Positions 3,071 to 52,489 of a stretch of 64,000 nt of DNA are shown in pieces. A program made the translations under genes and the position numbers. The DNA lies in the IMG/VR virus record IMGVR_UViG_3300032285_004054, positions 154,401 through 218,400 of that record. One strand, 5' to 3'. The stretch's first letter is position 1. Every line of letters starts with the position of its first letter. The notes under the pieces were generated by a model. It was not told the origin of the DNA, made no database searches, and saw only the letters and a list, made by a program, of their open reading frames with translations.

Positions 3071-3627
3071 AATTCGTAAGGGTTGTTATATTCGTATTTT
3101 TGTGTTTCCCAGCGTTCAATAGAATTAAGCACTTGCATAACTCTATTTTCAACTGAACCTGAAATTCTAATAACAGGAACTTTATACGATTGTATAATAG
3201 CTTGAAACGATTGCACTACACATTCAAAGAAATCTCTATTAACAGTTCGTTGACCGTCTTCTACTAACGGCAATTCCGGTTCAACATAAAAAATAATATC
3301 ATATCTATCAATCATTGCATAAAACAATTCTCTAATAGCACTCAGCACTTTTAAGTCTTTAACCAAAGACATTGAGTATGCATAACCATCTAAAGCACAA
3401 CGATCGTAAATAATATTACCGTCTTCATTAAGACGCTGAAGATGTTTAGTCATAATAGCTAATTGAGTTACCTCATCACCATCCTCATTTATATTATAAC
3501 CTGCCTCCTGCATACCTCTTGTTAAAGAAGTTTTAAAAGAAAAATCATCTAATAAACCGCTATCTTGTAACGCATTTACAAGAGTAGTTTTACCTTGACT
3601 ATGAGCTCCTGAAATAGCTACCTTCAT
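3067..3627 (-). CDS. P-loop nucleotide kinase-like protein (AAA_28/thymidylate kinase-like)
   Basis: GAHSQGKTT Walker A, YDRCALD; ATGA-coupled to queF and dpdN. Confidence 0.8.
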   Translation of the reverse strand: MKVAISGAHSQGKTTLVNALQDSGLLDDFSFKTSLTRGMQEAGYNINEDGDEVTQLAIMTKHLQRLNEDGNIIYDRCALDGYAYSMSLVKDLKVLSAIRELFYAMIDRYDIIFYVEPELPLVEDGQRTVNRDFFECVVQSFQAIIQSYKVPVIRISGSVENRVMQVLNSIERWETQKYEYNNPYEL

Positions 3628-4163
3628 GCTGAATATAATAACCTCTTATTCAAAAATGTAAACCATAAATTTGTAGCATCCTTATGAAGTTTTTCTAAAA
3701 CTTCAAACTCAAGTACCCCTTCTATAAGAATTGTACTATACTCTTCTATTTTACCGCCATCAAGTTCGGCAGTACAGCGATGAATTGTATTACCTGACCA
3801 TTTCTGAAGTTCTTGTACAGCTCTTTTTTGAGGGTCCTTGCCTTTAAGATGAGGATGAAGCAAGAGATTAGCAGGATGTAGATTATATATTTCATACTCT
3901 TCACATATTTCACCCGGTATAATCCTCAACCATCCGTGTAACGTAACGAATGCGTTTTTAGGTATATGATGTTTATACTCTTCTATAGAAGGCGATTTAC
4001 TAATTTGAAAAATTCTAGCTCCAAACTCGTTAATAAGTTTTTGATTAACGCCGTTTAAATCCTGTCTATTGGTTATAATAAGATCAGGTGTACGGTTAAG
4101 TTTCTTTGAAAGATTGTAAATCTCACTACCTGTTTGACTAAAAAAAGTTACCCAAGGTCTCAT
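3624..4163 (-). CDS. dpdN: PurN-like formyltransferase, probable preQ1 formyltransferase DpdN
   Basis: LHGWLRII, YNLHPANL, TIHRCTAELDGG match the formyl_trans_N fold; lies between queF and dpdA. Confidence 0.8.
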   Translation of the reverse strand: MRPWVTFFSQTGSEIYNLSKKLNRTPDLIITNRQDLNGVNQKLINEFGARIFQISKSPSIEEYKHHIPKNAFVTLHGWLRIIPGEICEEYEIYNLHPANLLLHPHLKGKDPQKRAVQELQKWSGNTIHRCTAELDGGKIEEYSTILIEGVLEFEVLEKLHKDATNLWFTFLNKRLLYSA

Positions 4164-7815: not shown

Positions 7816-9069
7816 TCAAGATAATTTTGGATTTGTCTCAAGAAGATATGTTCTTTCATTAGAACCAAACGGCGTAAAATATGCTTCGTGATGTTTTCCG
7901 AGATTCTTTTCATCTTCAAGCCAGTAGTTATCAGTAAACGCACGTGACTTCTTACAAAGATCAGCATAACGAGTTTGATCTTTAAGAGCATATTTAATTT
8001 GATCAATAAACTCATCACCTGTCTTATACTTTAAGAGAGCATCCTTATATGTTACCATATCTGGACAAACACAAGGTAGACCCATTGCTCCTGCTTCTAA
8101 TAATTTAATATTAGATTTAGCACGATTAAAATTATTATCTTGTAGGGCAGCGAATGTTAGCTGTGTACCTGACTCTGCCATAGAAGCCGGGAAGTCTGGT
8201 AACTGTACCCACTCCTTGTAAATAATTTCACCTGAATCAACAAACGGTTTTAACGGTAGGGGGTAGCAACCGTAAAACTGCCATTGATAATCCTTACGGG
8301 TCTTCATTACAGCATTAACTACATGTGCAAAATCGTCTGCTTGATTAACACGGTTAACTACGTCTACGTGTGTACCTGAAGCAAAAATTGAAATAACGGG
8401 TTTCTTTTTATTCTTTTCGTATCCTTTGATAAGCTTATCGAGGTTGTAATAGCGATCAAACCACCATTTCAATAGATAGTTCGGTATTACAGTCGTAGCT
8501 TTATTACCTGTTTTCTCAATAAAATAATCTCTCATGAAATCACATGTAACAGTAACCTCATCACACATGTTCATAATATCGAGAATAGATCCTCGAATCT
8601 CATCGCTCGTAAATGCATCTTTATTACGGTTGTAATCTGGAATATCTTCTCTAAAGACAATATCGTCGATTTCGTAAATAAGCTTAAAGCCGTTTTGCTT
8701 GGAAAGCTCTTTAAGAACTTTAACAAACTCTTTTTGAATTGGTGTTGCCTGGCGTTGAATTTTAACTGCCTGAATGCCCTGATAAAATCTAGGATCCAGA
8801 ACCATCGTTGTTAATTCTAACACAACAGCTTTATTATAGAGATTAAGCATGGAGTTAGGAGCCATACAACGATAAAAACTACAGCCACCGTAATCAGCTA
8901 AATAATTTACAGCTCTTGGTAGATTTGCCCCAGGTATTTCAGGTGGAGGTAATTCAAAAGAACCTCTTGTAGGTACAGCACAAAATGTTGAAGGCATACC
9001 TAAAGGTAGGCCAACAGGTGCACCTATTGTTGTGTCTAAGCTAGTTCGTACGAGATTATAGTTGCTCAT
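7816..9069 (-). CDS. Glycosyltransferase (GT-B-like)
   Basis: YEIDD, FNRAKSNIKLLEAGAMGLPCVC (GT4-like nucleotide-binding motif). Confidence 0.75.
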   Translation of the reverse strand: MSNYNLVRTSLDTTIGAPVGLPLGMPSTFCAVPTRGSFELPPPEIPGANLPRAVNYLADYGGCSFYRCMAPNSMLNLYNKAVVLELTTMVLDPRFYQGIQAVKIQRQATPIQKEFVKVLKELSKQNGFKLIYEIDDIVFREDIPDYNRNKDAFTSDEIRGSILDIMNMCDEVTVTCDFMRDYFIEKTGNKATTVIPNYLLKWWFDRYYNLDKLIKGYEKNKKKPVISIFASGTHVDVVNRVNQADDFAHVVNAVMKTRKDYQWQFYGCYPLPLKPFVDSGEIIYKEWVQLPDFPASMAESGTQLTFAALQDNNFNRAKSNIKLLEAGAMGLPCVCPDMVTYKDALLKYKTGDEFIDQIKYALKDQTRYADLCKKSRAFTDNYWLEDEKNLGKHHEAYFTPFGSNERTYLLETNPKLS

Positions 9070-10867
9070 TGTTGTTTAATATATATGTAAAACCGTTTCT
9101 TTTTTCAAGCTGAATAATACTATCAACTTTACTGTTAATAGCGTTACTACGATGTGTTATAATATAACATCCTTCATTATATTTTTCAAGACGTTCACGT
9201 AATACTTTCATTACTAATTCAACACCTTTGTCGTCTAAAGAGGAATCGAGTAGTTCATCATAAAAAATAGTACTAAAATTAATATCGCCCTGTAAGCGTC
9301 TAATGTCTAGAAAAGCAAATAAACAGGCGAGGTCAATTCTTTTACGTTCACCACCAGAGAAGTTAAAATAAGATTTAACTTCGTTATTTTCATCGATAAT
9401 TTGCTCATCAAAAAACTCGTTAAACTGACATAAGCAATTTGCATGTAGTGCATTTAAGTAGTGAGCTAATCTAGCATTCAATAGCTTTAATATTTTTTTT
9501 ACAATATAAGCTTTAACTCCTTCCTCTGAAACAACAAATTTAACACTATCCAATACGTTTAAATTTAAATCTAACGCATCTATTTGTTGGATGTAGTTAT
9601 TTTGCTCTATTGTTAAATTTTTAACGTTTTCTTCTAAAGAAGTGTTAGTTTCTTGTTTAACAGATTCGATATCTCTTAGAATCTCGTTATTACTTTCTTC
9701 AATAATATTAAGCTTATTTGTACAGATAATATTTTTATTTTTAAGATCTTTAATCTTATCTTTTTTATCTTGTAGTTCTCTAAATTGCTGTTTAATATAC
9801 TTAATGTTTTCTTTAACATTATCGTATTGCTCTTGCCACTTGCTTACGTTTTTAGTGTACTGTACTTCTTTTTCTTTTAACTTATTAATAGCATCAGTTC
9901 TATGTGTCGTATCTTCTTCAGAGTATGGTCGTTGACACAGCTTACACGATGAACCTACCTTTTCAATCTCTTTAATATTGTTAATATTTGTTTCTAATTC
10001 GAACTTAGCAGTAGTTAACTGCTGTAATGTATTTGTATGCTCAGTATCTGCTGCAACTTGAAGCTCGTTTAGTTCTGTTTCTTTATTTGAAATAAGCTCT
10101 TCAATATTTACTGGTACATCAATTATACTATTTTTAAGTAGGGTATAATTGCTGTTATTGTTTTCAATTTTAACCTCAAGATCTTTTATTTTGTTTTGTT
10201 TATTAACATTGAACTGATTAAGTTGTACTAGATTAAATTCAAGAGTTTTATCAATTGTTGTTTTTTTAGCAAAAACTACATCATACTCTCTCTTCAACTC
10301 ATTGTATTGCTCTCTAGCTTTTAAAAGCATCTCTGAAAACACTTCTAGATTAAGCGTGCTTTCGATAAATTTTCGTTTATCAACTTTAGACTGTGCCATA
10401 AAAGGTACAGTATTATTAATCGTCATTACAACAGTATTTTGAAATATTTTGCTAGTAGAGTTTACTAACTGTTGTATATACTCGTTTGTTTTAGGTAAAG
10501 TTGAACGCGTGACATCAACACCATCTTTTAAGATGGAACATTTTGTAGGTCCTAAGGACCGTGTTACGGTATAATTGTTTGTTATACCGTTTACGCTTAT
10601 TTGTAATTCGAGTTTAACTTCGCAATGTTTTTTATTATAAGAGTTAACAATAAGATCTTTACTTAGTTCTCTAATCGTTGAACCGAATAACGCAAAATGC
10701 AATGCATCGACGACTGTCGATTTACCTACACCGTTTTTAGAATCTTCCTTATCGTAGTTAATGCCTGTAATGACATTAATACCTGATTGAAAGTTAATAA
10801 CTATCGGTTCACTACCTACCGATAGAAAATTACGAACTGTAAGTGTTTTAAAGCTTATTACCCGCAC
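9056..10867 (-). CDS. 46: Recombination ATPase gp46 (SbcC/Rad50-like)
   Basis: NGVGKST, CKLC zinc hook, FSGGERKRID signature, DELLD. Confidence 0.96.
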   Translation of the reverse strand: MRVISFKTLTVRNFLSVGSEPIVINFQSGINVITGINYDKEDSKNGVGKSTVVDALHFALFGSTIRELSKDLIVNSYNKKHCEVKLELQISVNGITNNYTVTRSLGPTKCSILKDGVDVTRSTLPKTNEYIQQLVNSTSKIFQNTVVMTINNTVPFMAQSKVDKRKFIESTLNLEVFSEMLLKAREQYNELKREYDVVFAKKTTIDKTLEFNLVQLNQFNVNKQNKIKDLEVKIENNNSNYTLLKNSIIDVPVNIEELISNKETELNELQVAADTEHTNTLQQLTTAKFELETNINNIKEIEKVGSSCKLCQRPYSEEDTTHRTDAINKLKEKEVQYTKNVSKWQEQYDNVKENIKYIKQQFRELQDKKDKIKDLKNKNIICTNKLNIIEESNNEILRDIESVKQETNTSLEENVKNLTIEQNNYIQQIDALDLNLNVLDSVKFVVSEEGVKAYIVKKILKLLNARLAHYLNALHANCLCQFNEFFDEQIIDENNEVKSYFNFSGGERKRIDLACLFAFLDIRRLQGDINFSTIFYDELLDSSLDDKGVELVMKVLRERLEKYNEGCYIITHRSNAINSKVDSIIQLEKRNGFTYILNNNEQL

Positions 10868-35406: not shown

Positions 35407-35407
35407 G

Positions 35408-35479
35408 TGGAATCGATGGGACTCGAACCCATAACCAATAGATTAAAAGTCTACTGCTCTACCATTGAGCTACGATTCC
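35408..35479 (-). tRNA. tRNA-Lys(UUU), CCA not encoded
   Basis: Cloverleaf folded by hand; loop CTTTTAA. Confidence 0.92.
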
Positions 35480-35483
35480 AAAA

Positions 35484-35558
35484 TGGTGCACGATGAGGGG
35501 ATCGAACCCCCGACCTTGTCCGTGTAAAGGACCTGCTCTACCGCTAAGCTAATCGTGC
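35484..35558 (-). tRNA. tRNA-Val(UAC)
   Basis: Loop TTTACAC, CCA encoded. Confidence 0.92.
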
Positions 35559-35564
35559 TAAAAG

Positions 35565-35644
35565 TGCTCATGGAGGGACTTGAACCCCCACCCTTACGGA
35601 CTAGATCCTAAGTCTAGCGCGGCTGCCAATTACGCCACATGAGC
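35565..35644 (-). tRNA. tRNA-Leu(UAG), CCA not encoded
   Basis: Loop CTTAGGA, class II variable arm. Confidence 0.92.
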
Positions 35645-35651
35645 TTTAAAA

Positions 35652-35727
35652 TGGTACATCGGGCAGGGATCGAACCTGCGACCAAGGGTTTAGAAAACCC
35701 CTGCTCTATCCACTGAGCTACCGATGC
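35652..35727 (-). tRNA. tRNA-Arg(UCU)
   Basis: Loop TTTCTAA, CCA encoded. Confidence 0.92.
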
Positions 35728-35731
35728 ATAT

Positions 35732-35902
35732 TTAAGGAAGTTCCTCCTTTGGAGGGTCAATAATATCTTTAATCTCTGCCTGAATACGTTTGATTTCTTC
35801 GTTAAAAGCTTTTGCAGACTGCTTCTTACGATTTTTCATATCGTCAAGATCCTGTACTAGTTGAAATACTCTTGCTTCTTTTGTTGTGTTTGTTTCTTCC
35901 AT
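35732..35902 (-). CDS. Small coiled-coil protein inside the tRNA cluster
   Basis: Manual translation MEETNTTKEARVFQLVQDLDDMKNRKK... (56 aa). Confidence 0.6.
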   Translation of the reverse strand: MEETNTTKEARVFQLVQDLDDMKNRKKQSAKAFNEEIKRIQAEIKDIIDPPKEELP

Positions 35903-35912
35903 AATTTTAAAG

Positions 35913-35988
35913 TGGTGCGCCCGGAGGGATTTGAACCCCCAACCAATCAGTTATGAGCCGACTGCTCTGACCATTGAGCTACAAGCGC
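35913..35988 (-). tRNA. tRNA(CAU), Ile2 or elongator Met
   Basis: Loop CTCATAA, A73, CCA; no initiator GGG/CCC stem. Confidence 0.85.
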
Positions 35989-35998
35989 GTTGTTAAAA

Positions 35999-36074
35999 TG
36001 GTACTCCAGGTCGGATTCGAACCGACACTTGAGGGATTTTAAGTCCCTTGTCTCTGCCGTTGGACTACTGGAGC
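35999..36074 (-). tRNA. tRNA-Leu(UAA) with short variable loop
   Basis: Loop CTTAAAA, 5-nt variable loop, CCA. Confidence 0.85.
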
Positions 36075-36219
36075 GCATAAAAGACATATTAATTACAAAG
36101 CCAAAGGCATTCAAGAAGAAAAATAATAAAACTCAAAATAACTACAATAGTAATAGTCTTTTCGTGATTCCAAAAATTTTGAAACGCAATATAGAGCTGA
36201 TTATTTTTCATATCAAAAA

Positions 36220-36314
36220 TGGTACTGGGTGTGGGAATCGAACCCACGCTCGGCCCTCATCTAGGGCGCCACGATTATAAGTCGTGCGGTGCTCTCCAAT
36301 TACACTAACCCAGT
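36220..36314 (-). tRNA. Atypical long-arm tRNA with UAU anticodon (reads Ile AUA)
   Basis: Acceptor ACTGGGT/ACCCAGT, loop CTTATAA, ~22-nt variable region with GCCCT/AGGGC stem, T-arm GTGGG-TTCGATT-CCCAC, CCA. Confidence 0.82.
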
Positions 36315-37778: not shown

Positions 37779-38174
37779 TTATATACCTTTTGCAGCAGCG
37801 TGGTAACGAGCTCTCTTAGCAACGTCACAAATAGCACTAGAAGCTACAGCAATCTTTTGTAACATCCAGGGCTCAATACTCTCACCAGAAGAGAGAATAT
37901 CATGAAGCTCTTTAGCGTTTGTAAAGAGATCAAAAAGGTTTGTCTTGGCCATTTCTAATTCCTCGCTTTCATGCTCTTCCGGAGACTCTTCACATTCACA
38001 ACCTTCTTCTTCAGGTTCTTCACCTAAATCCATAACAATTACACCAGCATCCTTGCCTTCATCATCCGTTACTTCAACAGGTGTTGTATCATGCTCAATA
38101 TCTGTAGGTTCATTATGATCTTTTTGTCTTGAGGAAATATAAGCCTCAGCAATTAAGCGAAATTCCTTGTCCAT
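37779..38174 (-). CDS. Putative internal virion protein
   Basis: MDKEFRLIAEAY; acidic; PWMLQKI helix. Confidence 0.6.
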   Translation of the reverse strand: MDKEFRLIAEAYISSRQKDHNEPTDIEHDTTPVEVTDDEGKDAGVIVMDLGEEPEEEGCECEESPEEHESEELEMAKTNLFDLFTNAKELHDILSSGESIEPWMLQKIAVASSAICDVAKRARYHAAAKGI

Positions 38175-38175
38175 A

Positions 38176-38541
38176 TTAAGCTACGCTTCCGTCCTCTGGA
38201 CAATTTCCTGTCTCGTGATCTCCGCCACAAGTCGTACAGACCTTAGCGGTTACTTTATCATCTTCGCCGGCTGTACCAGCAACTTCTTCTTTTTCTTTCT
38301 TTGTAAGAAGAGCGTCAAGATCAGCGATGGTCTTACCGTGGTCGTTAACAATCTTAACAATATCTTCTTTTTCGTCCTTAAGCTTTAGATAGTCCTTAGA
38401 ACCGTGCTCAGCTTTAAGTAAGGAACGAACTACTTTGTAGTAACGTCTTGCAAGCTTTTTGTTAACAACTTTATCAGTAGCTGTACCTTCGAGGATGCGC
38501 TGATAAGCTTCCGCTAATAATACTTCATCTTTATTGATCAT
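38176..38541 (-). CDS. Putative internal virion protein with C-terminal Cx2Cx3Hx4C knuckle
   Basis: LLAEAYQRILEG; CTTCGGDHETGNC; TAAATA 6 nt upstream. Confidence 0.6.
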   Translation of the reverse strand: MINKDEVLLAEAYQRILEGTATDKVVNKKLARRYYKVVRSLLKAEHGSKDYLKLKDEKEDIVKIVNDHGKTIADLDALLTKKEKEEVAGTAGEDDKVTAKVCTTCGGDHETGNCPEDGSVA

Positions 38542-38550
38542 ATATTATAT

Positions 38551-38772
38551 TTAATCTTTCCTATGGGACTTCTTCCACCATTTGCACCAGGCACTAGGCT
38601 TAATGTCCCCGCTAACAGCAGAACATTTATTTGGTGATCTCCACATTGTACATTGATCACATCGCTGTCCCTTAACAGTGTGAGCTACATAACCCGCTTC
38701 TGCTTTAGAGTGTTTTGCTTTAGCTTCACTTAACATCTCTAAAGCTAATTTTATAACTTTATCGAAGCTCAT
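38551..38772 (-). CDS. HiPIP-like [4Fe-4S] domain protein with capsid-targeting-like N-terminus
   Basis: AGY...CDQC...C...GDIKPSAWCKWW matches the HiPIP Cys/aromatic pattern. Confidence 0.75.
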   Translation of the reverse strand: MSFDKVIKLALEMLSEAKAKHSKAEAGYVAHTVKGQRCDQCTMWRSPNKCSAVSGDIKPSAWCKWWKKSHRKD

Positions 38773-39203
38773 CCGCCTTGCTGTGCTGCCTTCATATATG
38801 AATGAAGTTGTTCGATATCCTTAGGTATAGCTTTTTTAATAACTTCAGGAATTGGTTTACTTAATAACAATAATGATTGTGCGTAATCTTTAGCTGTATC
38901 TCTATCTTTTGAAATAGCTATAATTTCGTGTGTAGTAAGTTGAGCACCATTTATATATTTACGATACGCTCTTTCAGCGTCATAACGTGTATTATCTTCT
39001 TTTGGTGTGTGAGGTTTGGCAACTTCTTCTGTTTCACCTGGACCTCTAGGGTTAGGCTCTTCAGGGTTTCCAGCAGGTCTAGCTTTAGCAGGATGTGCTA
39101 AACCTAATGAAGCAGCCATGGCTGCAGTTGCCATAGCTTTTGAAAAAGGTCCTTCTTGAACCAATTCATATGCTTCTGTTATTTTTTGTATATCTTTACT
39201 CAT
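38769..39203 (-). CDS. Putative internal virion protein
   Basis: KITEAYELVQEG followed by hydrophobic MATAAMAASLGLA. Confidence 0.55.
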   Translation of the reverse strand: MSKDIQKITEAYELVQEGPFSKAMATAAMAASLGLAHPAKARPAGNPEEPNPRGPGETEEVAKPHTPKEDNTRYDAERAYRKYINGAQLTTHEIIAISKDRDTAKDYAQSLLLLSKPIPEVIKKAIPKDIEQLHSYMKAAQQGG

Positions 39204-39204
39204 A

Positions 39205-39459
39205 TTAATCTTTATTTACTACGCTGTCAAAACCTGCACTCCAGAGATCAGCAGCTTTTTTATTACCGCCTTTATGAGGATTTTCAGGCATAACACCATC
39301 TCTGAGATATCTTCTTCCAGCTAAAGCGCCATGGGCAAAATGATCAGATGCATCTGAGGCTGCGTGATAATCAGTAGGAGTTCTTGACATAAGTTTTTCG
39401 TATTCTTGTCTACTAATAGTATCGTATGCTTCGTTTAAAGCGGTTTCGAATTTCGACAT
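39205..39459 (-). CDS. Putative internal virion protein
   Basis: MSKFETALNEAY; TAAATA 6 nt upstream. Confidence 0.6.
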   Translation of the reverse strand: MSKFETALNEAYDTISRQEYEKLMSRTPTDYHAASDASDHFAHGALAGRRYLRDGVMPENPHKGGNKKAADLWSAGFDSVVNKD

Positions 39460-39482
39460 ATAATATATTTAAGGTTTAATAT

Positions 39483-39532
39483 AAAAAAAGAGACGGTAGA
39501 TCAAGAGGCGACCAAGCCCTCAACCTACCGTC
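39483..39532 (-). terminator. Long hairpin followed by a U-tract
   Basis: GACGGTAG/CTACCGTC outer stem, inner GAGG/CCTC stem, T7 on the minus strand. Confidence 0.6.
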
Positions 39533-39578
39533 ATTTTGCTCTTGTTTAACGTCGTAGCGCTAGCCAACTCAGACGGGT

Positions 39579-39800
39579 CTAAGTACGCTCTATGTTTTTG
39601 TAACGTACCCCTCTGCGTTTCCTTAGTAAAGGCTCCGGACTTGAGACCGGCTTAGTAGCATTAATACGATGTTTTAATCTACACATGAATCTATATACAG
39701 TATCCGGATCAGGCAAGCAAAGAAATAAAAATATTATTAATGGAAACCCCATAAAAACCGCTATACCTTCCAGATACTGTAAAATAGCACTCACTAGCAA
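39579..39800 (-). CDS. Small membrane protein
   Basis: One TM helix plus basic tail. Confidence 0.45.
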   Translation of the reverse strand: MLVSAILQYLEGIAVFMGFPLIIFLFLCLPDPDTVYRFMCRLKHRINATKPVSSPEPLLRKRRGVRYKNIERT

Positions 39801-39809
39801 ATAACGATT

Positions 39810-40775
39810 TTACGTTATAGCATCAATTAATCCACCGAAATTTTCTTCGGTCTCCGGATCAATTATACCTTTTAGTAAATCAGATTCTATTGGATAAAGA
39901 TCATTATACTCGACTACATATTTTTCACTTTTATCTTTAGCAAAATCAGGCTCAACAAGAGCTTGTCGTACGCGATGTCTTGCCCAAGGACTCATTTCCA
40001 CAGCTGGTTTAATGTATGTAGCAAGTTCACCTTTCCATAAATTATCTCTATCACTTCTTAAACAAACTCTATCTCCCTCTTTAAGGTTGTTTCTCCATGT
40101 TTCTAAATCAAAATCCTTACTCTCTGTAACACTTAGTAAATCACTAAATGAATCTTTAGTATCTTTTGTTAATGACTTTCTTAATTCCCAATCAATAGGA
40201 AATAATTTACTTAGATTGTATCTAGTATAGCCTTGAGAGCCATCTATATTGTGACCTTCTTTAACAAGTAAAGCAATATCTCTAAAACTATCAACTACTT
40301 CTAAATATGTAGCTTTAAATCCACGGACAGTAAAAGGTCTAACTTCTACCTTATCGCCTTTCTTTAAGTTACTTCGCCAAGTTCTAAGATATTCGTAATC
40401 CTCTTGAGTCTCTTCTGATACTATATCGATTAAATCGCTAAATGAATTTTCTGTATCCTTAGATAGAGAGTTCTTTAATTCATATTTTTTTAAAGCTTTT
40501 TGTACTTTATCGGTTACAACCTTTCTAACTGTATAGTAACTATCAGGTACATGTAAGCTTCTATACCATTCATCAAAATCTTTCATATGAACAAACCAAC
40601 CATTACCTGATTTAGCATCTCTAGTCCATATAGCAGGTTTTCCGTCTATAATAATATCCCAACAAGGATTCCACATCTGACCTCCCATTAAGGTTTCAAA
40701 AGGACCCTTAACAATCTCTACTTTAAGATCATTAGCTCTTCTTAATTCCTCTAATATAAGATCATTAAATCTCAC
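39810..40775 (-). CDS. Tail-family member: three-module fusion
   Basis: MRFNDLILEE start; tails KYELKNSLSKDTENSFSDLIDI, DWELRKSLTKDTKDSFSDLLSV, IDPETEENFGGLIDAIT. Confidence 0.85.
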   Translation of the reverse strand: MRFNDLILEELRRANDLKVEIVKGPFETLMGGQMWNPCWDIIIDGKPAIWTRDAKSGNGWFVHMKDFDEWYRSLHVPDSYYTVRKVVTDKVQKALKKYELKNSLSKDTENSFSDLIDIVSEETQEDYEYLRTWRSNLKKGDKVEVRPFTVRGFKATYLEVVDSFRDIALLVKEGHNIDGSQGYTRYNLSKLFPIDWELRKSLTKDTKDSFSDLLSVTESKDFDLETWRNNLKEGDRVCLRSDRDNLWKGELATYIKPAVEMSPWARHRVRQALVEPDFAKDKSEKYVVEYNDLYPIESDLLKGIIDPETEENFGGLIDAIT

Positions 40776-40914
40776 GGTTTATTATTTATCAATATCTGCT
40801 CTAGCGCGGCGAGGTTTCTCCTAATTTCCCCGCTTAGTGCATCCGTCTCGGCCCCAAAGTTTTTGAAAATATTTTATACTCTAAATTGAATTCCGATTAT
40901 TAATTCTAGGGAAA

Positions 40915-41199
40915 TTAAAGAATATCTAATAGATCTCCGAACGTCTCGCCTGTCTCCTTGGACAGATGCCGCTTTATATTATGATCTTCTATAGCTTTGG
41001 CAATAGCGTTCTTTACTCCTTGCTTCTTATAGAGTTCAAGTCCCCAAACAGTGAGGTATTGGTTAGTCTCCAAATATCTAAAACCATCTGGCTCCTCGCC
41101 TATTGTTAACTTCTGGCCATCTACCTCCACGTCATAGCCTATATAGCCTTCGTCCTTAAGGTCGTAAGGACCTCTTAAGAATTTTACTTTATAAGACAT
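40915..41199 (-). CDS. Tail-family member
   Basis: Ends HLSKETGETFGDLLDIL. Confidence 0.85.
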   Translation of the reverse strand: MSYKVKFLRGPYDLKDEGYIGYDVEVDGQKLTIGEEPDGFRYLETNQYLTVWGLELYKKQGVKNAIAKAIEDHNIKRHLSKETGETFGDLLDIL

Positions 41200-41542
41200 C
41201 TAAGAACCCTCCGAATGAATCTCTTGTTTCTGGAGACATAGCTTGAAGTGTCTCCCAATTCTTAATAGCTTTAGCTACCGGACCGTTTTCAGTATCTTTT
41301 CCATCCCAAAGGTAAATCTCTGGCATATAAAGAACATAAGGGTATTCACCACGTTCTGGAGTATAAATGACAAAACTATTTCGATCTTCCGTATCCTCTT
41401 TAATATGCATTAACCAGGCACCTTCTATATCTTCGGGAAGTGTATAGCCTCGCTTTAGATACTCATTGATCTCTTCATCGGTAGCCCTTCTTAGGACTTT
41501 ATAGAAGTTACCAGACTCTAGAAAGAACTTGTTAAAGGACAT
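41189..41542 (-). CDS. Tail-family member
   Basis: MSFNKFFLES ... MSPETRDSFGGFLDVL. Confidence 0.85.
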   Translation of the reverse strand: MSFNKFFLESGNFYKVLRRATDEEINEYLKRGYTLPEDIEGAWLMHIKEDTEDRNSFVIYTPERGEYPYVLYMPEIYLWDGKDTENGPVAKAIKNWETLQAMSPETRDSFGGFLDVL

Positions 41543-41906
41543 CTAATAAACCTCCAAATGAATCTTTAGTTTCTTTGTCTACACTATTTAAAAGATTATA
41601 ATCTTCTATAGCCTTGTCTATTTGTTCTCTAAACGGATCATCATAGACGTCGGTATGATTGGGGATAATCTTAGGATAGGGAGGTAGCCAATGCCCTCTA
41701 TAATGACCTGGTGGCCAGCAGTAATAGCATATGCACTCCTTGTCCTTATACTTCATTTGTAGCTTATAGACATTCTCTTCCCAATCTTTTATATCCAGCT
41801 CATTACGAAAGAGATGGGTCATTGGTCCCTCAAGTATCTTTACTTCAATTCCTCTATTATCACCGTAATTGATAAGAGCTTCTTTTATTAATCGATCAAA
41901 GTACAT
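41532..41906 (-). CDS. Tail-family member
   Basis: MYFDRLIKEA ... VDKETKDSFGGLLDVL. Confidence 0.85.
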   Translation of the reverse strand: MYFDRLIKEALINYGDNRGIEVKILEGPMTHLFRNELDIKDWEENVYKLQMKYKDKECICYYCWPPGHYRGHWLPPYPKIIPNHTDVYDDPFREQIDKAIEDYNLLNSVDKETKDSFGGLLDVL

Positions 41907-42312
41907 CTAATAATCCTCCAAATGAATCTCTTGTATCTTTACTTAATCCTTGCTTAAAATTCCATTGATCTATAAGAGCTGGAACTGTTTCACGTAACAT
42001 CTTATTAAGGAATTGAGCTCTCGGGGCTGACTTGTGTTGTCTACCGACCATACGTTTAAACCAAGTAGGTGTTTGAATAACAGTATAATAAGCTGTTGTC
42101 TTCTGAAGCTCTCTATCTTTATCCTCTATCTTCTTAACCCACCAAGTACCTCCTTTACTATCCTTTAAACAAAAGACCTCTTTATAGTCTTTATGTGGAG
42201 GTTGTTCAAGATGAAGCTCACCAGTAAGACTATCCATAAAGCCGGTACCTACAACCTTAAATGTTGTATTCATCCAGTCCAGTTCTTCTAATACTAATTG
42301 ATTAAAGTACAT
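41896..42312 (-). CDS. Tail-family member
   Basis: MYFNQLVLEE ... LSKDTRDSFGGLLDVL. Confidence 0.85.
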   Translation of the reverse strand: MYFNQLVLEELDWMNTTFKVVGTGFMDSLTGELHLEQPPHKDYKEVFCLKDSKGGTWWVKKIEDKDRELQKTTAYYTVIQTPTWFKRMVGRQHKSAPRAQFLNKMLRETVPALIDQWNFKQGLSKDTRDSFGGLLDVL

Positions 42313-42664
42313 CTAATAATCCTCCGAATGTTTTCTTTGTATCATTACTTAATAGCTTTCTAAACTCCCAATCATTAATAGCATCAGGAACTAACCCGGA
42401 GAACCCCATAAAGGTTACATCTCCGCTATCATGAATGTTGTAGCTAGTATATCCTTCCTTCTCGTTATCTTTAAACCGTACAACAAGACGCGGCCAATAC
42501 CCAGGTCTATTACCATCATCGTCTACCACCCAGGCACCTTTTATATACTCTTCCCTTACCCAGCGATAGCCATAACCGTATATCCTCTGAAGATCTTCTT
42601 CTGTAGCGTCCCGAACGACGTGATACTTCTCTAAAGCTTCTAATACTATTTGATTAAAGTACAT
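42302..42664 (-). CDS. Tail-family member
   Basis: MYFNQIVLEA ... LSNDTKKTFGGLLDVL. Confidence 0.85.
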   Translation of the reverse strand: MYFNQIVLEALEKYHVVRDATEEDLQRIYGYGYRWVREEYIKGAWVVDDDGNRPGYWPRLVVRFKDNEKEGYTSYNIHDSGDVTFMGFSGLVPDAINDWEFRKLLSNDTKKTFGGLLDVL

Positions 42665-42995
42665 CTAATAATCCTCCGAAAGTTTCTCTTGTATCCTTTG
42701 ATAAGGATTGTTTTAATTCCCAATCTTTCATAGCTTTAATAATAAGGCTATCAAGTGTATCAATATCAATACCGAATAGCTTTTTACATTGATCTCGTTC
42801 ATATACAGCATTATCCGGATCAATTCCTGAAGTATTTAAACCATCGAGATAAAGCATACATTGATCATCTTTGACATAACGAAAGAAACACTTCTTACCA
42901 TTTACAGTTATATTATAATGAAGGTCTCCGATAGCCCAATCTGGAAGATCTTTGTCTTCTATAACATTAATAATCTTAATAGAAGGTTGTTTCAT
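42654..42995 (-). CDS. Tail-family member (no N-terminal CTS)
   Basis: Ends DWELKQSLSKDTRETFGGLLDVL. Confidence 0.85.
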   Translation of the reverse strand: MKQPSIKIINVIEDKDLPDWAIGDLHYNITVNGKKCFFRYVKDDQCMLYLDGLNTSGIDPDNAVYERDQCKKLFGIDIDTLDSLIIKAMKDWELKQSLSKDTRETFGGLLDVL

Positions 42996-43003
42996 ATAGG
43001 CTA

Positions 43004-43540
43004 TTAGAGGGCGTCTAGGAAGTCCTTAAATGATCCTTGAGTCTTAGTATCGGTTTGTCCTAGAGCTAAGAAGTTCTTTTCTTTATGTTTTATCCACCAG
43101 TTTACTAGCTTATCTAGCTTCTCGGCAAATGCGTAATGATAACCTTTCTGCCTCCATACTGGATCCTCTGTATTATTATCATAATGAACGAAGTAACTTA
43201 TATATGGATATAAAACATTCGGTACCCAAGAGGCAGCTGCAGCAATATGGGTAGGTCCTGTTTCATCTTCAAGTCTTCTAGTATCATCAATACAAGTCAT
43301 ATAATATGTCTTTGTATCTGTCCATGTAGCAAGCTCCCTAGTCTTATGTAATATACCATTAGGTTCAGCCTCCTTCGGTAGTCCTTCTTTAATGTCATAT
43401 ATCTCAAAGTTATGAAAGGGCATTGAATCAACCTCATCCGTTGACCAGACCGATCGTTCAAAGCCTTGCTTTCTATCGGGGTTTCTTGATCGAGGTACAT
43501 TAGCTACTAGAGCCTCTTTGAAGTAATCTTTAAATGACAT
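43004..43540 (-). CDS. Tail-family member
   Basis: MSFKDYFKEA ... TDTKTQGSFKDFLDAL. Confidence 0.8.
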   Translation of the reverse strand: MSFKDYFKEALVANVPRSRNPDRKQGFERSVWSTDEVDSMPFHNFEIYDIKEGLPKEAEPNGILHKTRELATWTDTKTYYMTCIDDTRRLEDETGPTHIAAAASWVPNVLYPYISYFVHYDNNTEDPVWRQKGYHYAFAEKLDKLVNWWIKHKEKNFLALGQTDTKTQGSFKDFLDAL

Positions 43541-43877
43541 CGATTAAACCTCCAAATGATTGTTCAGTATCCTTTGATAGATTGTTTTTTAATTCCCAAG
43601 ATATAAGCTGTTTGTATATAGGAAAGTCCGGATAGATATACCCTTCAAAGCCATAATTAGGTAAGCTATACACCATTAAGTTTTCATTGTTAAGATCTTC
43701 AAATAAGTCCTTACAACGTATGACTAGAACATCAGATACATCGGTATAGTTTCTAATTACCCATCCTCTAGTTAATTTTAAATCCTCATCATATTGAGAA
43801 GATAAACCATCGAGTATTTTCTGAGGAGCTAATTCTATCTTCTCCTTCTTTGATTCGTAGAATAACTTAAATGACAT
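43530..43877 (-). CDS. Tail-family member
   Basis: MSFKLFYES ... LSKDTEQSFGGLIDVI. Confidence 0.85.
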   Translation of the reverse strand: MSFKLFYESKKEKIELAPQKILDGLSSQYDEDLKLTRGWVIRNYTDVSDVLVIRCKDLFEDLNNENLMVYSLPNYGFEGYIYPDFPIYKQLISWELKNNLSKDTEQSFGGLIDVI

Positions 43878-44265
43878 CTAGTAGCCCTCCGAAAGTATCT
43901 CTTGTCTTATCTGGTAGATGCCTCCTTTGTTCAAAGTCATCTATAGCCTTAACTACTCTCCTACCTTCTTCTCTATAGGCTGGTATATCCCGCTCGGTAA
44001 AGGCACCACATCTATCCATACCTTCTAAAGTATAAACATCATAACCTTTTACATACGTAATAGATCTTATAGCAATATATCTAGCAATATATCTATCAGT
44101 TCCTGATTCCTTCTTTATAGTAAGAAGATAGAGAGGGTCATCTTTTCTCCAAGGATACTTCCTACGAAAGACCCCCTCATACCCCTCAGGCACTGCTTCT
44201 ACAGTTATATTATCTCTTTGAAGCTTATAAGGCTCTTTAGATTCGTAGAATAACTTAAATGACAT
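43867..44265 (-). CDS. Tail-family member
   Basis: MSFKLFYES ... LPDKTRDTFGGLLDVI. Confidence 0.85.
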   Translation of the reverse strand: MSFKLFYESKEPYKLQRDNITVEAVPEGYEGVFRRKYPWRKDDPLYLLTIKKESGTDRYIARYIAIRSITYVKGYDVYTLEGMDRCGAFTERDIPAYREEGRRVVKAIDDFEQRRHLPDKTRDTFGGLLDVI

Positions 44266-44608
44266 CTAATAGACCTCCAAATGAATCTTTAGTATCGTCT
44301 GATAGATTATTTTTAAACTCCCATTTCTTAATAGCTTTAGCAAGAGGTGAGTTTATATCCTCATGACTAATAAGGTCAATAGTGTTAGGGTCTAATGTGT
44401 AAATTGAATATGTCTTCCAGTCAGGAATATATGCTACAATAACCTGTCCTTCATCATAGTCATCGTTCATATAAACGATCCATGCCTGTTCAATATCTCC
44501 CTTCTCCGTATCAAGATCTCTTGTAAGATCTTTAAGTTCTTTCTTTGTAAATCTTCTAAGAACTTTGTATGAGTCGTTTGACTCTGTAAAAAATTGTTTA
44601 AATGACAT
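44255..44608 (-). CDS. Tail-family member (first in the array)
   Basis: MSFKQFFTES ... LSDDTKDSFGGLLDVI. Confidence 0.85.
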   Translation of the reverse strand: MSFKQFFTESNDSYKVLRRFTKKELKDLTRDLDTEKGDIEQAWIVYMNDDYDEGQVIVAYIPDWKTYSIYTLDPNTIDLISHEDINSPLAKAIKKWEFKNNLSDDTKDSFGGLLDVI

Positions 44609-52121: not shown

Positions 52122-52195
52122 TGGCTACCCCTCATGGATTCGAACCATGACAAAGAGAGCCAAAATCTCTTGTGCTACCGTTACACTAAAGGGTA
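52122..52195 (-). tRNA. tRNA-Gln(UUG)
   Basis: U1-A72, loop TTTTGGC, CCA. Confidence 0.9.
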
Positions 52196-52199
52196 AGAA

Positions 52200-52274
52200 T
52201 GGCTCCCGAGGCTGGATTCGAACCAACAACATGCGAGTTAACAGCTCGCTGCTCTACCGTTGAGCTACTCGGGA
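52200..52274 (-). tRNA. tRNA-Asn(GUU)
   Basis: Loop CTGTTAA, G73, CCA. Confidence 0.93.
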
Positions 52275-52280
52275 ACAATT

Positions 52281-52363
52281 TGGGCAGAGAAGGACTCGAA
52301 CCTTCGAAGGCGAATGCCAAAGGATTTACAGTCCTCCCCGTTTGACCGCTTCGGTATCTACCC
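52281..52363 (-). tRNA. tRNA-Tyr(GUA), CCA not encoded
   Basis: Loop CTGTAAA, long variable arm. Confidence 0.92.
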
Positions 52364-52414
52364 GTATTGCTTATACAATTTATAATAGACATAGATATAG
52401 TCAAGAGAATAAAA

Positions 52415-52489
52415 TGGCATCCTCAAGGGGATTTGAACCCCTGCTAGGTCCGTGAAAGGGACCGGTGCTAACCGCTACACTATGAGGAC
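52415..52489 (-). tRNA. tRNA-Glu(UUC)
   Basis: Loop CTTTCAC, CCA. Confidence 0.92.

What the first reader, a model, noticed from the sequence alone, without database searches (positions are those of the whole stretch)
38551..38772. HiPIP-like iron-sulfur protein with a capsid-targeting leader instead of a Tat signal
Seen: after MSFDKVIKLALEMLSE/A comes AGY-x7-CDQC-x8-C-x11-WCKWW. Established: HiPIPs are Tat-exported periplasmic [4Fe-4S] electron carriers with this Cys/Trp pattern. Inference: a redox or Fe-S protein packaged in the head and injected, possibly to serve radical-SAM QueE, buffer oxidative damage, or repurposed as a binder. I know no phage HiPIP.
Basis: partly seen in the sequence, partly recalled or inferred. 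Interest (0 to 1): 0.65.

Follow-up and report, generated by a model that had tools for sequence, protein, structure and literature searches.

The report
Head-packaged phage mini-HiPIP iron-sulfur protein
A T4-like phage encodes a tiny iron-sulfur protein of the bacterial HiPIP type whose export signal is replaced by the kind of short leader that T4 uses to load proteins into its head, so it is probably carried in the capsid and delivered to the host with the DNA.

Summary
The ORF is real: window 38551-38772, minus strand, 73 aa. Residues about 17-67 are a HiPIP domain. They keep the four Cys at PioC's exact spacing and the shielding aromatics. The family profile hits only HiPIPs in the PDB (PioC E=6e-19). 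An AF2 model (pLDDT 89) superposes on PioC and 1isu at 1.1-1.3 Å. There is no Tat signal.

The 16-residue N-terminus is an amphipathic helix ending in L-x-E|A. The genome is T4-like, with a gp21-type S77 prohead protease and a gp23 capsid protein. Orthologues keep the domain (77% identity) but swap leaders (31%). Some leaders start MKTFKEF, identical to the start of T4 internal protein I. Neighbouring unrelated small genes carry the same leader types.

In other phages the domain is fused to portal, MuF, XkdF protease, lysin and Acb1 domains. It is flanked by hydrophobic-x-E sites far more often than background. The gene sits in a five-gene operon behind a late-promoter-like motif.

Best reading: a capsid-targeted, protease-processed internal head protein carrying an air-stable [4Fe-4S] cluster. 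Cluster binding, packaging and cleavage are inferred, not shown, and the downstream function is unknown. The QueE idea is not supported. A HiPIP label exists only as automatic annotation; I found no literature.

The parts
38551..38772 (-). Whole gene: 73-aa precursor made of leader plus mini-HiPIP domain (stop codon 38551-38553)
   Evidence: ORF. 29 homologous clusters. 62 IMG/VR loci.
38725..38772 (-). Leader, residues 1-16 (MSFDKVIKLALEMLSE). A predicted amphipathic helix with two hydrophobic-x-E sites (ALE12|M and LSE16|A); proposed capsid-targeting propeptide.
   Evidence: AF2 helix at residues 3-17. Leader identity among orthologues is 31% against 77% for the domain, and all 26 orthologues have hydrophobic-x-E at the boundary. 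T4 IP leaders for comparison.
38554..38724 (-). Predicted mature protein, residues 17-73: basic (pI 9.8) mini-HiPIP domain with a KKSHRKD tail.
   Evidence: pI and charge. PioC alignment. Fold match to HiPIPs.
38584..38661 (-). The four putative [4Fe-4S] ligands: Cys38 (38659-38661), Cys41 (38650-38652), Cys50 (38623-38625), Cys63 (38584-38586).
   Evidence: Invariant in alignment A3 of 146 sequences. Aligned to the PioC ligands. Codon positions read.
39205..39459 (-). First gene of the five-gene cluster, 84 aa, leader MSKFETALNE|AY.
38769..39203 (-). Second gene, 144 aa, leader MSKDIQKITE|AY. Its stop overlaps the HiPIP start (ATGA).
38176..38541 (-). Fourth gene, 121 aa, leader MINKDEVLLAE|AY. 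Homologue present next to the HiPIP gene in locus L008.
37779..38174 (-). Fifth gene, 131 aa, acidic, leader MDKEFRLIAE|AY.
39483..39532 (-). Hairpin (39492-39532) plus T-run that closes the upstream unit, just before the cluster.
   Evidence: Read directly from the sequence. The simple terminator scan did not list it because its loop is longer than the scan allows.
39466..39473 (-). CTTAAATA, a T4-late-promoter-like motif 6 nt before the first gene's ATG. A second copy, ATTAAATA, lies at 38548-38555 just after the HiPIP stop.
   Evidence: ATAAATA-type heptamers are 9-16 fold enriched upstream of genes in this genome, and precede the protease and scaffold genes.

Best explanation
The gene encodes the precursor of an internal head protein of a T4-like phage. 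Proposed sequence of events: (1) The protein is made late in infection from a five-gene operon. (2) The HiPIP domain folds in the cytoplasm around a [4Fe-4S] cluster supplied by the host ISC/SUF machinery, as bacterial HiPIPs do before Tat export. (3) The 16-residue amphipathic leader docks it on the scaffolding core of the prohead, playing the role that the Tat signal plays in bacterial HiPIPs. (4) The gp21-type prohead protease cuts after Glu16 (LSE|A) and perhaps Glu12, freeing a 57-residue basic (pI 9.8), aromatic-shielded and therefore air-stable mini-HiPIP. (5) The mature protein stays among the packaged DNA and leaves through the tail with it at the next infection. Shown here: the HiPIP homology and fold, the absence of a Tat signal, the T4-type protease in the genome, and the modular, T4-CTS-like nature of the leader. 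Inferred: cluster binding, packaging, cleavage and ejection. What the protein does in the capsid or the new host is not known. My preferred guess is a compact DNA-associated cargo that either protects the packed genome or acts early against the host. It is not a conventional electron carrier, because the cytoplasm offers no high-potential partner.
For: HiPIP identity:
- PioC E=2e-5 for the single sequence. The family profile gives 6e-19, with seven other HiPIPs and nothing else.
- 94 of 146 family members hit Pfam HIPIP, and three relatives pass its cut-off.
- The AF2 model has pLDDT 88.8. The top 18 Foldseek PDB hits are all HiPIPs: PioC TM 0.77 at rmsd 1.3 Å, 1isu TM 0.72 at rmsd 1.1 Å.
- Y28, W44 and W62 are conserved at the positions of the cluster-shielding aromatics named in PMC10654088.

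Leader:
- The genome has Peptidase_S77 (E=6e-30) and Gp23 (E=1e-90).
- T4 ipII/ipIII start MKTYQEFIAE|A, and ipI starts MKTFKEF.
- Orthologue leaders include MKTFKEFFIE|SK, MKTFKQFLAE|SK and, in the cultured phage S-SRM01, MKSFQEFLFE|EE.
- The leader is 31% identical among orthologues against 77% for the domain, and every one of 26 has hydrophobic-x-E at the boundary.
- Leader types are shared with unrelated neighbours. L008 has four MNKDxxLIxEAY genes beside a HiPIP with MNTDDRRICEAY. L011 has three consecutive MK[KT]FKEF genes.
- 17 genes of this genome match a CTS-like N-terminal pattern, against 4.9±2.1 in composition-preserving shuffles.

Independent architecture evidence:
- The domain is fused to Phage_portal, Phage_Mu_F, XkdF protease, DUF2213, Glyco_hydro_19 lysin, Acb1, ParB and NUDIX domains. 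This is the syntax of packaged, injected proteins described in PMC5512222.
- Hydrophobic-x-E lies at the N-boundary in 55 of 94 non-Tat members, against 17% background and 3 of 17 Tat members. At the C-boundary it is 27 of 59 against 24%.
- In five relatives a second basic module follows the HiPIP domain after DLKE|K or NLAE|K. In this genome the same module is a separate ORF with its own leader, MQTFKQYLLE|K.

Context:
- Tightly coupled five-gene operon behind a hairpin and a late-promoter-like motif.
- It lies 1.5 kb from a tRNA cluster, as the T4 ip genes do.
- Three of four large contigs carrying the gene hold an S77 protease.
- The T4 CTS is known to load foreign folded proteins (PMC9026906).
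Against: - No virion proteome, no N-terminal sequence and no metal analysis exists for any member. The only cultured carrier, S-SRM01, was not analysed by mass spectrometry.
- This protein's own leader is a looser match to the T4 CTS than those of some orthologues, and carries a three-residue insertion.
- Many orthologous loci show no CTS-like neighbour within 3 kb.
- The N-terminal pattern is so common in this genome (about 20 genes) that it could be a general N-terminal helix habit rather than a packaging signal.
- The late-promoter reading rests on a motif that ends only 5-14 nt before start codons, which is unusual for T4.
- The single-sequence Pfam score is under the gathering cut-off (20.0 against 22).
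- The boundary-site statistics use related sequences, so the p-values overstate independence.
- The four cluster neighbours are acidic to neutral, unlike classic basic internal proteins.
Confidence: 0.6

Rival explanations
1. A cytoplasmic, non-packaged phage HiPIP. The protein stays in the infected cell as a soluble one-electron carrier or iron-sulfur helper (an auxiliary metabolic gene), and the N-terminal helix is simply part of the protein or a partner-binding element.
For: The HiPIP fold and ligands are intact. Loss of the Tat signal alone would leave the protein in the cytoplasm. 27 of the 175 proteins classified (the 150 best representatives plus the close family) are leaderless short forms, so a leader is not needed for the domain to be useful to a phage. 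One relative's locus lies beside queuosine-type genes (PTPS), and this genome has QueF.
Against: - This does not explain leader swapping with a conserved Glu boundary.
- It does not explain MKTFKEF leaders identical to the start of T4 IPI, or fusion to portal, MuF and prohead-protease proteins.
- It does not explain hydrophobic-x-E sites on both sides of the domain.
- From established redox chemistry, a high-potential carrier has no obvious cytoplasmic partner and cannot reduce radical-SAM or ferredoxin-dependent enzymes.
- No Radical_SAM gene is present.
Confidence: 0.2
2. A packaged internal protein in which the Cys4 site is only a structural staple (zinc, or a cluster with no redox role). 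The HiPIP fold is reused as a very small, rigid, basic DNA-binding or defence-inhibiting module, as T4 IPI* is a compact inhibitor.
For: The mature part has pI 9.8 with a Lys/Arg tail. T4 internal proteins are diverse, compact anti-restriction cargo joined only by the CTS (PMC3012670). Relatives are fused to the anti-defence domain Acb1 and to ParB and Zeta domains. This overlaps with the best explanation for packaging and differs only on the metal and its role.
Against: All three aromatic positions that shield a cubane in true HiPIPs are kept across 146 sequences. The Cys spacing is exactly that of PioC. Zinc sites rarely need such a hydrophobic cage. Nothing tested here discriminates between the metals.
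Confidence: 0.15
3. A recently captured host HiPIP gene that lost its signal peptide and is decaying, or a spurious ORF with no function.
For: It is small, has no PHROG family and is annotated only as hypothetical in S-SRM01.
Against: The domain is 77% conserved over 26 orthologues with invariant ligands. There are 62 viral loci and 1869 representative clusters at E<=1e-3. The query's clade is well supported (SH-aLRT 98) and lies apart from the group holding most Tat-type proteins. The gene is translationally coupled within an operon.
Confidence: 0.02

Closest known systems
PioC, the 54-residue periplasmic HiPIP of Rhodopseudomonas palustris TIE-1 (PDB 6xyv)
   Same: Same minimal size and identical ligand spacing (C-x2-C-x8-C-x12-C). 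Same AGY / aromatic / W-C landmarks. 31% identity. TM 0.77 and rmsd 1.3 Å to the model.
   Different: PioC is made with a Tat signal, works in the periplasm and belongs to the pioABC iron-oxidation operon (PMC10654088). The phage protein has an acidic amphipathic leader ending in L-x-E, a Lys/Arg tail and a phage operon context.
T4 internal proteins IPI, IPII and IPIII with their capsid targeting sequence
   Same: Short N-terminal propeptide of 10-19 residues ending in hydrophobic-x-E before a small residue. Some orthologue leaders are identical to the start of IPI over seven residues. A gp21-type protease is in the genome. The products are small, sit in a variable gene cluster and lie next to a tRNA cluster.
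   Different: The mature T4 IPs have no metal cluster and no sequence or fold relation to HiPIP. Processing and packaging are proven for T4 and only inferred here.
Synechococcus phage S-SRM01 QPX48026.1 (UniProt A0A879R316), 67 aa
   Same: The only homologue found in 50,697 GenBank phage records, using four different queries. It has leader MKSFQEFLFE, the same four Cys, and TM 0.72-0.78 to the model.
   Different: 45% identical over the 38 residues matched by tblastn (Foldseek gives 41% over 64 columns). A cyanomyovirus of a different lineage: the window phage's capsid protein is only about 35% identical to cyanophage gp23. Annotated as hypothetical in GenBank and as a HiPIP-profile domain by UniProt automation. 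No experiments.
Portal- and MuF-fused 'polyvalent' ejected proteins (Iyer et al. 2017, PMC5512222)
   Same: Relatives of this domain occur in the same architectures: portal-MuF-HiPIP, HiPIP-XkdF protease, HiPIP-ParB, HiPIP-Acb1 and HiPIP-lysin.
   Different: The window protein is a single domain with its own leader, not a fusion. HiPIP is not mentioned in that paper's text.
[4Fe-4S] clusters of siphophage and GTA tail-tip proteins (lambda gpL type)
   Same: The iron-sulfur cluster in a phage particle that the literature search turned up (papers listed).
   Different: Those are tail-tip structural proteins with a different fold and place. They are not HiPIP, not in the head and not propeptide-targeted.

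Membership tests
HiPIP (Pfam PF01355, PROSITE HiPIP profile) | Four Cys ligands in the order and spacing C-x2-C-x(8-16)-C-x(10-13)-C | tested here: met
   C38, C41, C50 and C63, with spacing identical to PioC. Invariant in 146 sequences.
HiPIP (Pfam PF01355, PROSITE HiPIP profile) | Aromatic residues caging the cluster: Tyr before Cys1, an aromatic after Cys2, and Trp/Tyr before Cys4 | tested here: met
   Y28 and W44 are invariant and W62 nearly invariant in A2. The positions named in PMC10654088 correspond.
HiPIP (Pfam PF01355, PROSITE HiPIP profile) | Single-sequence score over Pfam's gathering cut-off | tested here: not met
   20.0 bits against a cut-off of 22. Relatives P0038, P0039 and P0042 score 23.1-23.6.
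HiPIP (Pfam PF01355, PROSITE HiPIP profile) | Profile-level homology to solved HiPIPs | tested here: met
   The A3 profile hits PioC at 6e-19, 3h31 at 3e-7, 1isu at 5e-6 and 1hlq at 2e-3. All eight hits are HiPIPs.
HiPIP (Pfam PF01355, PROSITE HiPIP profile) | HiPIP fold | tested here: met
   The model has pLDDT 88.8. The top 18 PDB matches are all HiPIPs, with rmsd 1.1-1.3 Å to 1isu and PioC. It is a predicted model, not a solved structure.
HiPIP (Pfam PF01355, PROSITE HiPIP profile) | Binds a [4Fe-4S] cluster cycling 2+/3+ at positive potential | not testable with these tools
   Needs UV-visible spectroscopy, EPR and potentiometry on purified protein.
Canonical bacterial HiPIP (periplasmic electron carrier) | Twin-arginine (Tat) signal peptide and periplasmic location | tested here: not met
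   No RR motif and no hydrophobic h-region in residues 1-16. 17 of the 175 classified proteins do carry RR signals and mostly group together in the tree.
T4-type internal head proteins (CTS cargo) | N-terminal propeptide of 10-19 residues resembling MKTYQEFIAE or MKTFKEF | tested here: inconclusive
   This protein's leader (MSFDKVIKLALEMLSE) shares the M-x-F-x-K-hydrophobic pattern but is longer. The orthologue P0008 has MKTFKEFFIE, and S-SRM01 has MKSFQEFLFE.
T4-type internal head proteins (CTS cargo) | Propeptide ends in L/I-x-E followed by a small residue (gp21 site) | tested here: met
   LSE16|A and ALE12|M. Hydrophobic-x-E is at the boundary in all 26 orthologues and is enriched family-wide.
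T4-type internal head proteins (CTS cargo) | Genome encodes a gp21-type (S77) prohead protease and T4-type head genes | tested here: met
   Peptidase_S77 at 101 bits and Gp23 at 300 bits. Three of four large related contigs also have S77.
T4-type internal head proteins (CTS cargo) | Late expression together with head genes | tested here: inconclusive
   A late-promoter-like CTTAAATA precedes the operon, and the motif class also precedes the protease and scaffold genes. No transcript data: no RNA run holds the stretch.
T4-type internal head proteins (CTS cargo) | Present in virions in processed form and ejected with the DNA | not testable with these tools
   Needs a virion proteome and N-terminal mapping. 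None exists for S-SRM01.
Polyvalent / portal-MuF-linked ejected proteins | Domain found fused to portal, MuF or other head-internal proteins | tested here: met
   Met for the domain family: P0070, P0086, P0089, P0090, P0082, P0130, P0073 and P0097. The window protein itself is stand-alone.

The most novel reading that the evidence does not exclude
Tailed phages of many lineages carry an air-stable [4Fe-4S] HiPIP module inside the capsid, either as free CTS-tagged cargo or fused to portal, MuF or prohead-protease proteins. Its redox chemistry would be the point. Lying among the densely packed DNA, it could act as a sacrificial electron donor that quenches oxidative (guanine-radical) damage to the genome in sunlit, oxic water. 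Alternatively it could be a redox-active effector or sensor delivered to the host in the first seconds of infection. That would be a new class of virion component and a new biological role for HiPIPs outside periplasmic electron transport.
Probability: 0.15. Interest if true: 0.88.

Novelty: new variant of a known kind. Interest (0 to 1): 0.68.

Why it matters
HiPIPs are textbook periplasmic electron carriers of phototrophs and iron oxidisers, and phage internal proteins are textbook anti-restriction cargo. This finding joins the two. If the prediction holds, a cofactor-bearing redox protein is loaded into capsids by swapping a Tat signal for a capsid-targeting propeptide. Both routes accept proteins that are already folded and cofactor-loaded.

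The comparative data go beyond this one gene. The same mini-domain turns up in about 1,900 representative clusters, many of them in phage head-internal architectures. It is found in only one cultured phage and, as far as I could find, in no paper. That gives a directly testable question, since S-SRM01 is in culture: do virions contain iron-sulfur protein in the head, and what does it do for the packaged DNA or the incoming infection? It also offers a natural, very small, metal-stapled cargo for T4-style protein delivery systems.

Tried and rejected
- The first AF2 run, on the shallow 29-sequence alignment, gave pLDDT 51 and was not used for fold search. The 146-sequence alignment fixed this.
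- Complex prediction of the S77 protease with the precursor returned no verdict (score 0.02). It is not evidence either way.
- PHROGs gave no family for this protein or its four neighbours.
- Megablast of the 6-kb neighbourhood against GenBank phages found nothing.
- The exact T4 late promoter TATAAATA is depleted in the window (2 against 12 expected). The relaxed motif [ACT][AT]TAAATA upstream of starts is the enriched signal.
- Rfam found only tRNAs. The sigma-70 and terminator scan was uninformative.
- The look-up of sequencing runs found one DNA holder, probably the source sample, and no RNA.
- The radical-SAM/QueE link was rejected: no PF04055 match in the genome, and the redox potentials do not fit.
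- Literature searches for HiPIP with phage, bacteriophage or virion, and for iron-sulfur with portal, found no report of a phage HiPIP. HiPIP does not appear in the text of the polyvalent-protein paper, and its supplements are not held.
- The domain tree is too short (57 columns) to resolve origins. Only the query's own clade and the clustering of Tat forms are usable.
- Context look-ups of two leaderless relatives returned contigs of 0.6-1 kb, too short to help.

Full report
**1. The observation**

The ORF exists exactly as described: window 38551-38772, minus strand, 73 aa. The sequence starts with MSFDKVIKLALEMLSE and continues AKAKHSKAEAGY. It holds Cys38-x2-Cys41-x8-Cys50-x12-Cys63, with Trp62 before the last Cys and WCKWW at 62-66. 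The start codon overlaps the stop of the upstream gene (ATGA) and is preceded by AAGG. Every orthologue also has a leader from an equivalent Met.

**2. It is a HiPIP domain**

- The single sequence scores 20.0 bits against Pfam HIPIP (E=8e-4), just under the 22-bit cut-off.
- It hits one solved protein convincingly, PioC, the 54-residue HiPIP of Rhodopseudomonas palustris (E=2e-5). All four ligands are aligned and the spacing is identical.
- The word search found 29 metagenomic clusters, 55-82% identical, with the four Cys invariant.
- A profile of 26 of them, searched against 1.84 billion representatives, found 1,869 clusters at E<=1e-3 and 107 at E<=1e-10.
- A 146-sequence domain alignment (A3) used as a profile hits only HiPIPs in the PDB: PioC 6e-19, 3h31 3e-7, 1isu 5e-6, 1hlq 2e-3, and four more.
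- 94 of the 146 members hit Pfam HIPIP on their own, and three relatives pass the cut-off.
- With the shallow alignment AlphaFold gave pLDDT 51. With A3 it gave 88.8 overall and about 95 over residues 21-67, with residues 3-17 as a separate helix.
- The top 18 Foldseek PDB matches are all HiPIPs. PioC gives TM 0.77 and rmsd 1.3 Å, and 1isu gives TM 0.72 and rmsd 1.1 Å.
- Y28, W44 and W62 sit where true HiPIPs place the aromatics that shield the cubane (PMC10654088).

Cluster binding itself cannot be tested here.

**3. The genome**

The window is the last 64 kb of a 218.4-kb IMG/VR virus record. The record encodes a T4 gp21-type prohead protease (Peptidase_S77, 101 bits) and a gp23 capsid protein (300 bits). 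The capsid protein is only about 35% identical to those of cyanomyoviruses, so this is a deep T4-like lineage of unknown host. The window also holds PolB, RecA/UvsX-like, helicase and QueF genes and eleven tRNAs.

**4. The leader**

There is no twin-arginine motif and no hydrophobic core. Several lines of evidence point to a capsid-targeting role.

- *T4 reference.* T4 ipII and ipIII begin MKTYQEFIAE|A, and ipI begins MKTFKEF and is cut after a later TE (read from NC_000866). In T4 these 10-19-residue capsid targeting sequences (CTS) dock cargo on the prohead core. The protease gp21 removes them by cutting after Glu. They will load foreign folded proteins (PMC9026906; PMC5694885; PMC3012670).
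- *Orthologue leaders.* The HiPIP gene's orthologues carry at least three leader types. Most have M-x-F-x-K-hydrophobic...L-L-x-E|AK. P0008, P0009 and P0014 have MKTFKEFFIE|SK or MKTFKQFLAE|SK, and P0028 has a shorter form (VKTFKEFYE|SK). P0021, P0023, P0024 and P0027 have MNKDxxLIxEAY...LEE|SK.
- *Cultured phage.* The one cultured phage with a homologue, Synechococcus phage S-SRM01, has MKSFQEFLFE|EE.
- *Conservation.* Among 26 orthologues the leader is 31% identical pairwise while the domain is 77% identical. All 26 keep hydrophobic-x-E at the junction.
- *Shared with neighbours.* In locus L008 four small neighbours start MNKDQKLISEAY and the like, beside a HiPIP starting MNTDDRRICEAY. In L011 three consecutive genes start MKKFKEFF, MKTFKEFY and VKTFKEFF.
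- *In the window itself.* The four flanking genes start M..K....L.AE|AY. Many other genes of the genome start MSFK.FF.E|S. In all, 17 genes match a CTS-like pattern, against 4.9±2.1 in shuffles that keep N-terminal composition.

**5. Independent evidence from domain architecture**

Among the best 150 representatives plus the close family (175 proteins), the domain occurs in several forms:

- 17 with Tat signals, the ordinary bacterial form, which mostly group together in the tree
- 27 as leaderless short proteins; one sits beside a terminase small subunit in a 34-kb phage contig
- at least 38 with CTS-like leaders
- 16 placed more than 150 residues into larger proteins (the text gives their Pfam domains below)

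Pfam shows that the large proteins include the following:

- portal proteins with C-terminal extensions: P0070 (portal-MuF-HiPIP), P0086, P0089, P0090, P0082
- a MuF protein: P0130
- XkdF-type phage proteases: P0073, P0097
- a DUF2213 protein: P0124
- leader-HiPIP-LysM-lysin proteins: P0045, P0048, P0063
- an Acb1 anti-CBASS polyprotein: P0060
- a NUDIX protein: P0112

BFVD adds fusions to Zeta-toxin, ParB, SppA and prohead-protease proteins. This is the architecture that Iyer et al. use to recognise proteins packaged in the head and injected (PMC5512222). HiPIP does not appear in that paper's text.

The domain is also bracketed by cleavage-type motifs:

| Boundary | Members | With hydrophobic-x-E | Background |
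|---|---|---|---|
| N-terminal, non-Tat | 94 | 55 (59%) | 17% |
| N-terminal, Tat | 17 | 3 (18%) | 17% |
| C-terminal, non-Tat | 59 | 27 (46%) | 24% |

The p-values overstate independence because the sequences are related.

The cleanest case is a second module. In P0008, P0009, P0014, P0026 and P0030 a basic module of about 50 residues (starting KSIHDPVRPG) follows the HiPIP domain after DLKE|, DLQE|, NLAE| or LQVE|. In this genome the same module is a separate 63-aa ORF (G000 91949-92140, outside the window) with its own leader, MQTFKQYLLE|K. So the fusion junction and the stand-alone leader end at the same L-x-E.

**6. Local context**

The gene is third in a five-gene, translationally coupled run on the minus strand (39459 down to 37779). 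The run begins right after a hairpin and T-run (39483-39532) and a CTTAAATA motif. ATAAATA-type heptamers are the most enriched words upstream of genes in this genome (52 genes against 3.2 expected). They precede the protease and scaffold genes and most of the structural region. I read them as T4-type late promoters, with the caveat that they lie unusually close to the start codons. The cluster lies 1.5 kb from a tRNA cluster, as the T4 ip genes do. Three of four large related contigs carrying the gene also carry an S77 protease.

**7. Mechanism**

Most likely (about 0.6), this is a late-made precursor. The HiPIP domain folds round a host-supplied [4Fe-4S] cluster in the cytoplasm, which is where Tat-exported HiPIPs also mature. 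The leader takes it to the prohead core, and the S77 protease trims it after Glu16 and perhaps Glu12. The resulting 57-residue product has pI 9.8, stays with the DNA, and is small enough to leave through the tail while folded. By analogy with bacterial HiPIPs, the buried, aromatic-caged cluster should be air-stable, which suits a particle that drifts in oxic water.

The role after that is open. A classical electron-carrier role is unlikely in the cytoplasm. Serving a radical-SAM enzyme is excluded by the redox potentials, and no such gene is present. Candidates are DNA-associated protection of the packed genome or an early anti-host action. I could not discriminate between them.

**8. Rivals**

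- A non-packaged cytoplasmic HiPIP (0.2). This fails to explain the leader swapping, the fusions and the boundary sites.
- A packaged protein in which the Cys4 site is only a metal staple (0.15). It shares the packaging steps with the best explanation and differs only on the metal and its role. Only spectroscopy can distinguish it.
- A decaying capture or spurious ORF (0.02). This is contradicted by the conservation.

**9. Novelty**

Four tblastn queries found the domain in only one of 50,697 GenBank phage records, S-SRM01. It is present in 62 IMG/VR loci of the close family alone. UniProt automation already labels the S-SRM01 protein and a few metagenomic phage proteins as HiPIP-domain proteins, so the bare annotation is not new. 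I found no paper on a phage HiPIP or on an iron-sulfur protein in a phage head. The virion Fe-S clusters that the literature search turned up are in siphophage tail tips. I therefore rate it a new variant of a known kind: new cargo for the known T4 CTS/internal-protein system, with a wider unreported pattern of HiPIP modules in head-internal phage proteins.

**10. Limits**

There are no proteomic, spectroscopic or transcript data. The complex prediction gave no verdict. The only sequencing run holding the stretch is probably the source metagenome. The statistics use related sequences.

Noticed in passing
window 39810-44608 (genes 39810-40775, 40915-41199, 41189-41542, 41896-42312, 42654-42995, 44255-44608), plus G000 8383-8781 and 9132-9572 outside the window: A multi-copy family whose members all end in the same C-terminal tail (L-S-K-D/E-T-x-x-S/T-F-G-G-L-L/I-D-V/I-L, then stop). 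The 321-aa member has the motif near its middle, a looser copy further on and the tail version at its end. Many members also begin with the CTS-like MSF[KN].FF.ES. The three members scanned had no Pfam or PHROG match better than weak sub-threshold hits. The fixed C-terminal tag is unexplained.
   Followed up: partly
G000 91949-92140 (-), outside the window: A 63-aa basic ORF (leader MQTFKQYLLE, then KNINDPVRPGILKRR ... FINYHCNK). It overlaps the end of a 433-aa gene. In other phages it is fused behind the HiPIP domain after an L-x-E site, so it is probably a second small internal-protein module.
   Followed up: partly
whole genome G000; in the window at 39466-39473 and 38548-38555: The late-promoter-like motif [ACT][AT]TAAATA ends only 5-14 nt before the start codon in about 61 genes, which would give near-leaderless late mRNAs. 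The exact TATAAATA is depleted in the window (2 against 12 expected).
   Followed up: partly
window 36220-36314 (-): tRNA-Ile with anticodon TAT is 95 nt long, unusually long for a tRNA. It closes a seven-tRNA cluster (35407-36314), and a second four-tRNA cluster lies at 52122-52489.
   Followed up: no
window 39460-39809: About 350 nt with no convincing ORF, ending in a strong hairpin and T-run. No Rfam family matched.
   Followed up: partly
window 38176-38541 (-); L008 2892-3245; L011 4280-4828: The HiPIP gene's downstream neighbour ends in a Cys/His knuckle (C-x2-C...H-x4-C). Its homologues in two other phages end in CxCxxCxxC, so this is possibly another small metal-binding cargo with an ...AEAY leader.
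   Followed up: no
window 2141-3070 (-) and 3624-4163 (-): A QueF-like nitrile reductase and a formyltransferase-like gene are present, but there is no Radical_SAM (QueE-type) match anywhere in the genome.
   Followed up: partly
proteins P0036, P0038 and P0071, and loci L051-L076: Phage polyproteins of 1,000-1,570 aa, starting with an HxGH nucleotidyltransferase-like segment and carrying an internal HiPIP domain bracketed by hydrophobic-x-E sites. L/I-x-E sites are about two- to threefold over-represented in two of the three tested (P0038, P0071). They are the (weakly supported) sister group of the query's clade.
   Followed up: partly
G000 40439-41929 (-) and 41946-43796 (-), outside the window: Two large proteins (496 and 616 aa) with ...LQEAY / ...LIFEAR leaders and late-type motifs upstream. 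They are candidate large head-internal proteins (Alt-like or scaffold-like).
   Followed up: no
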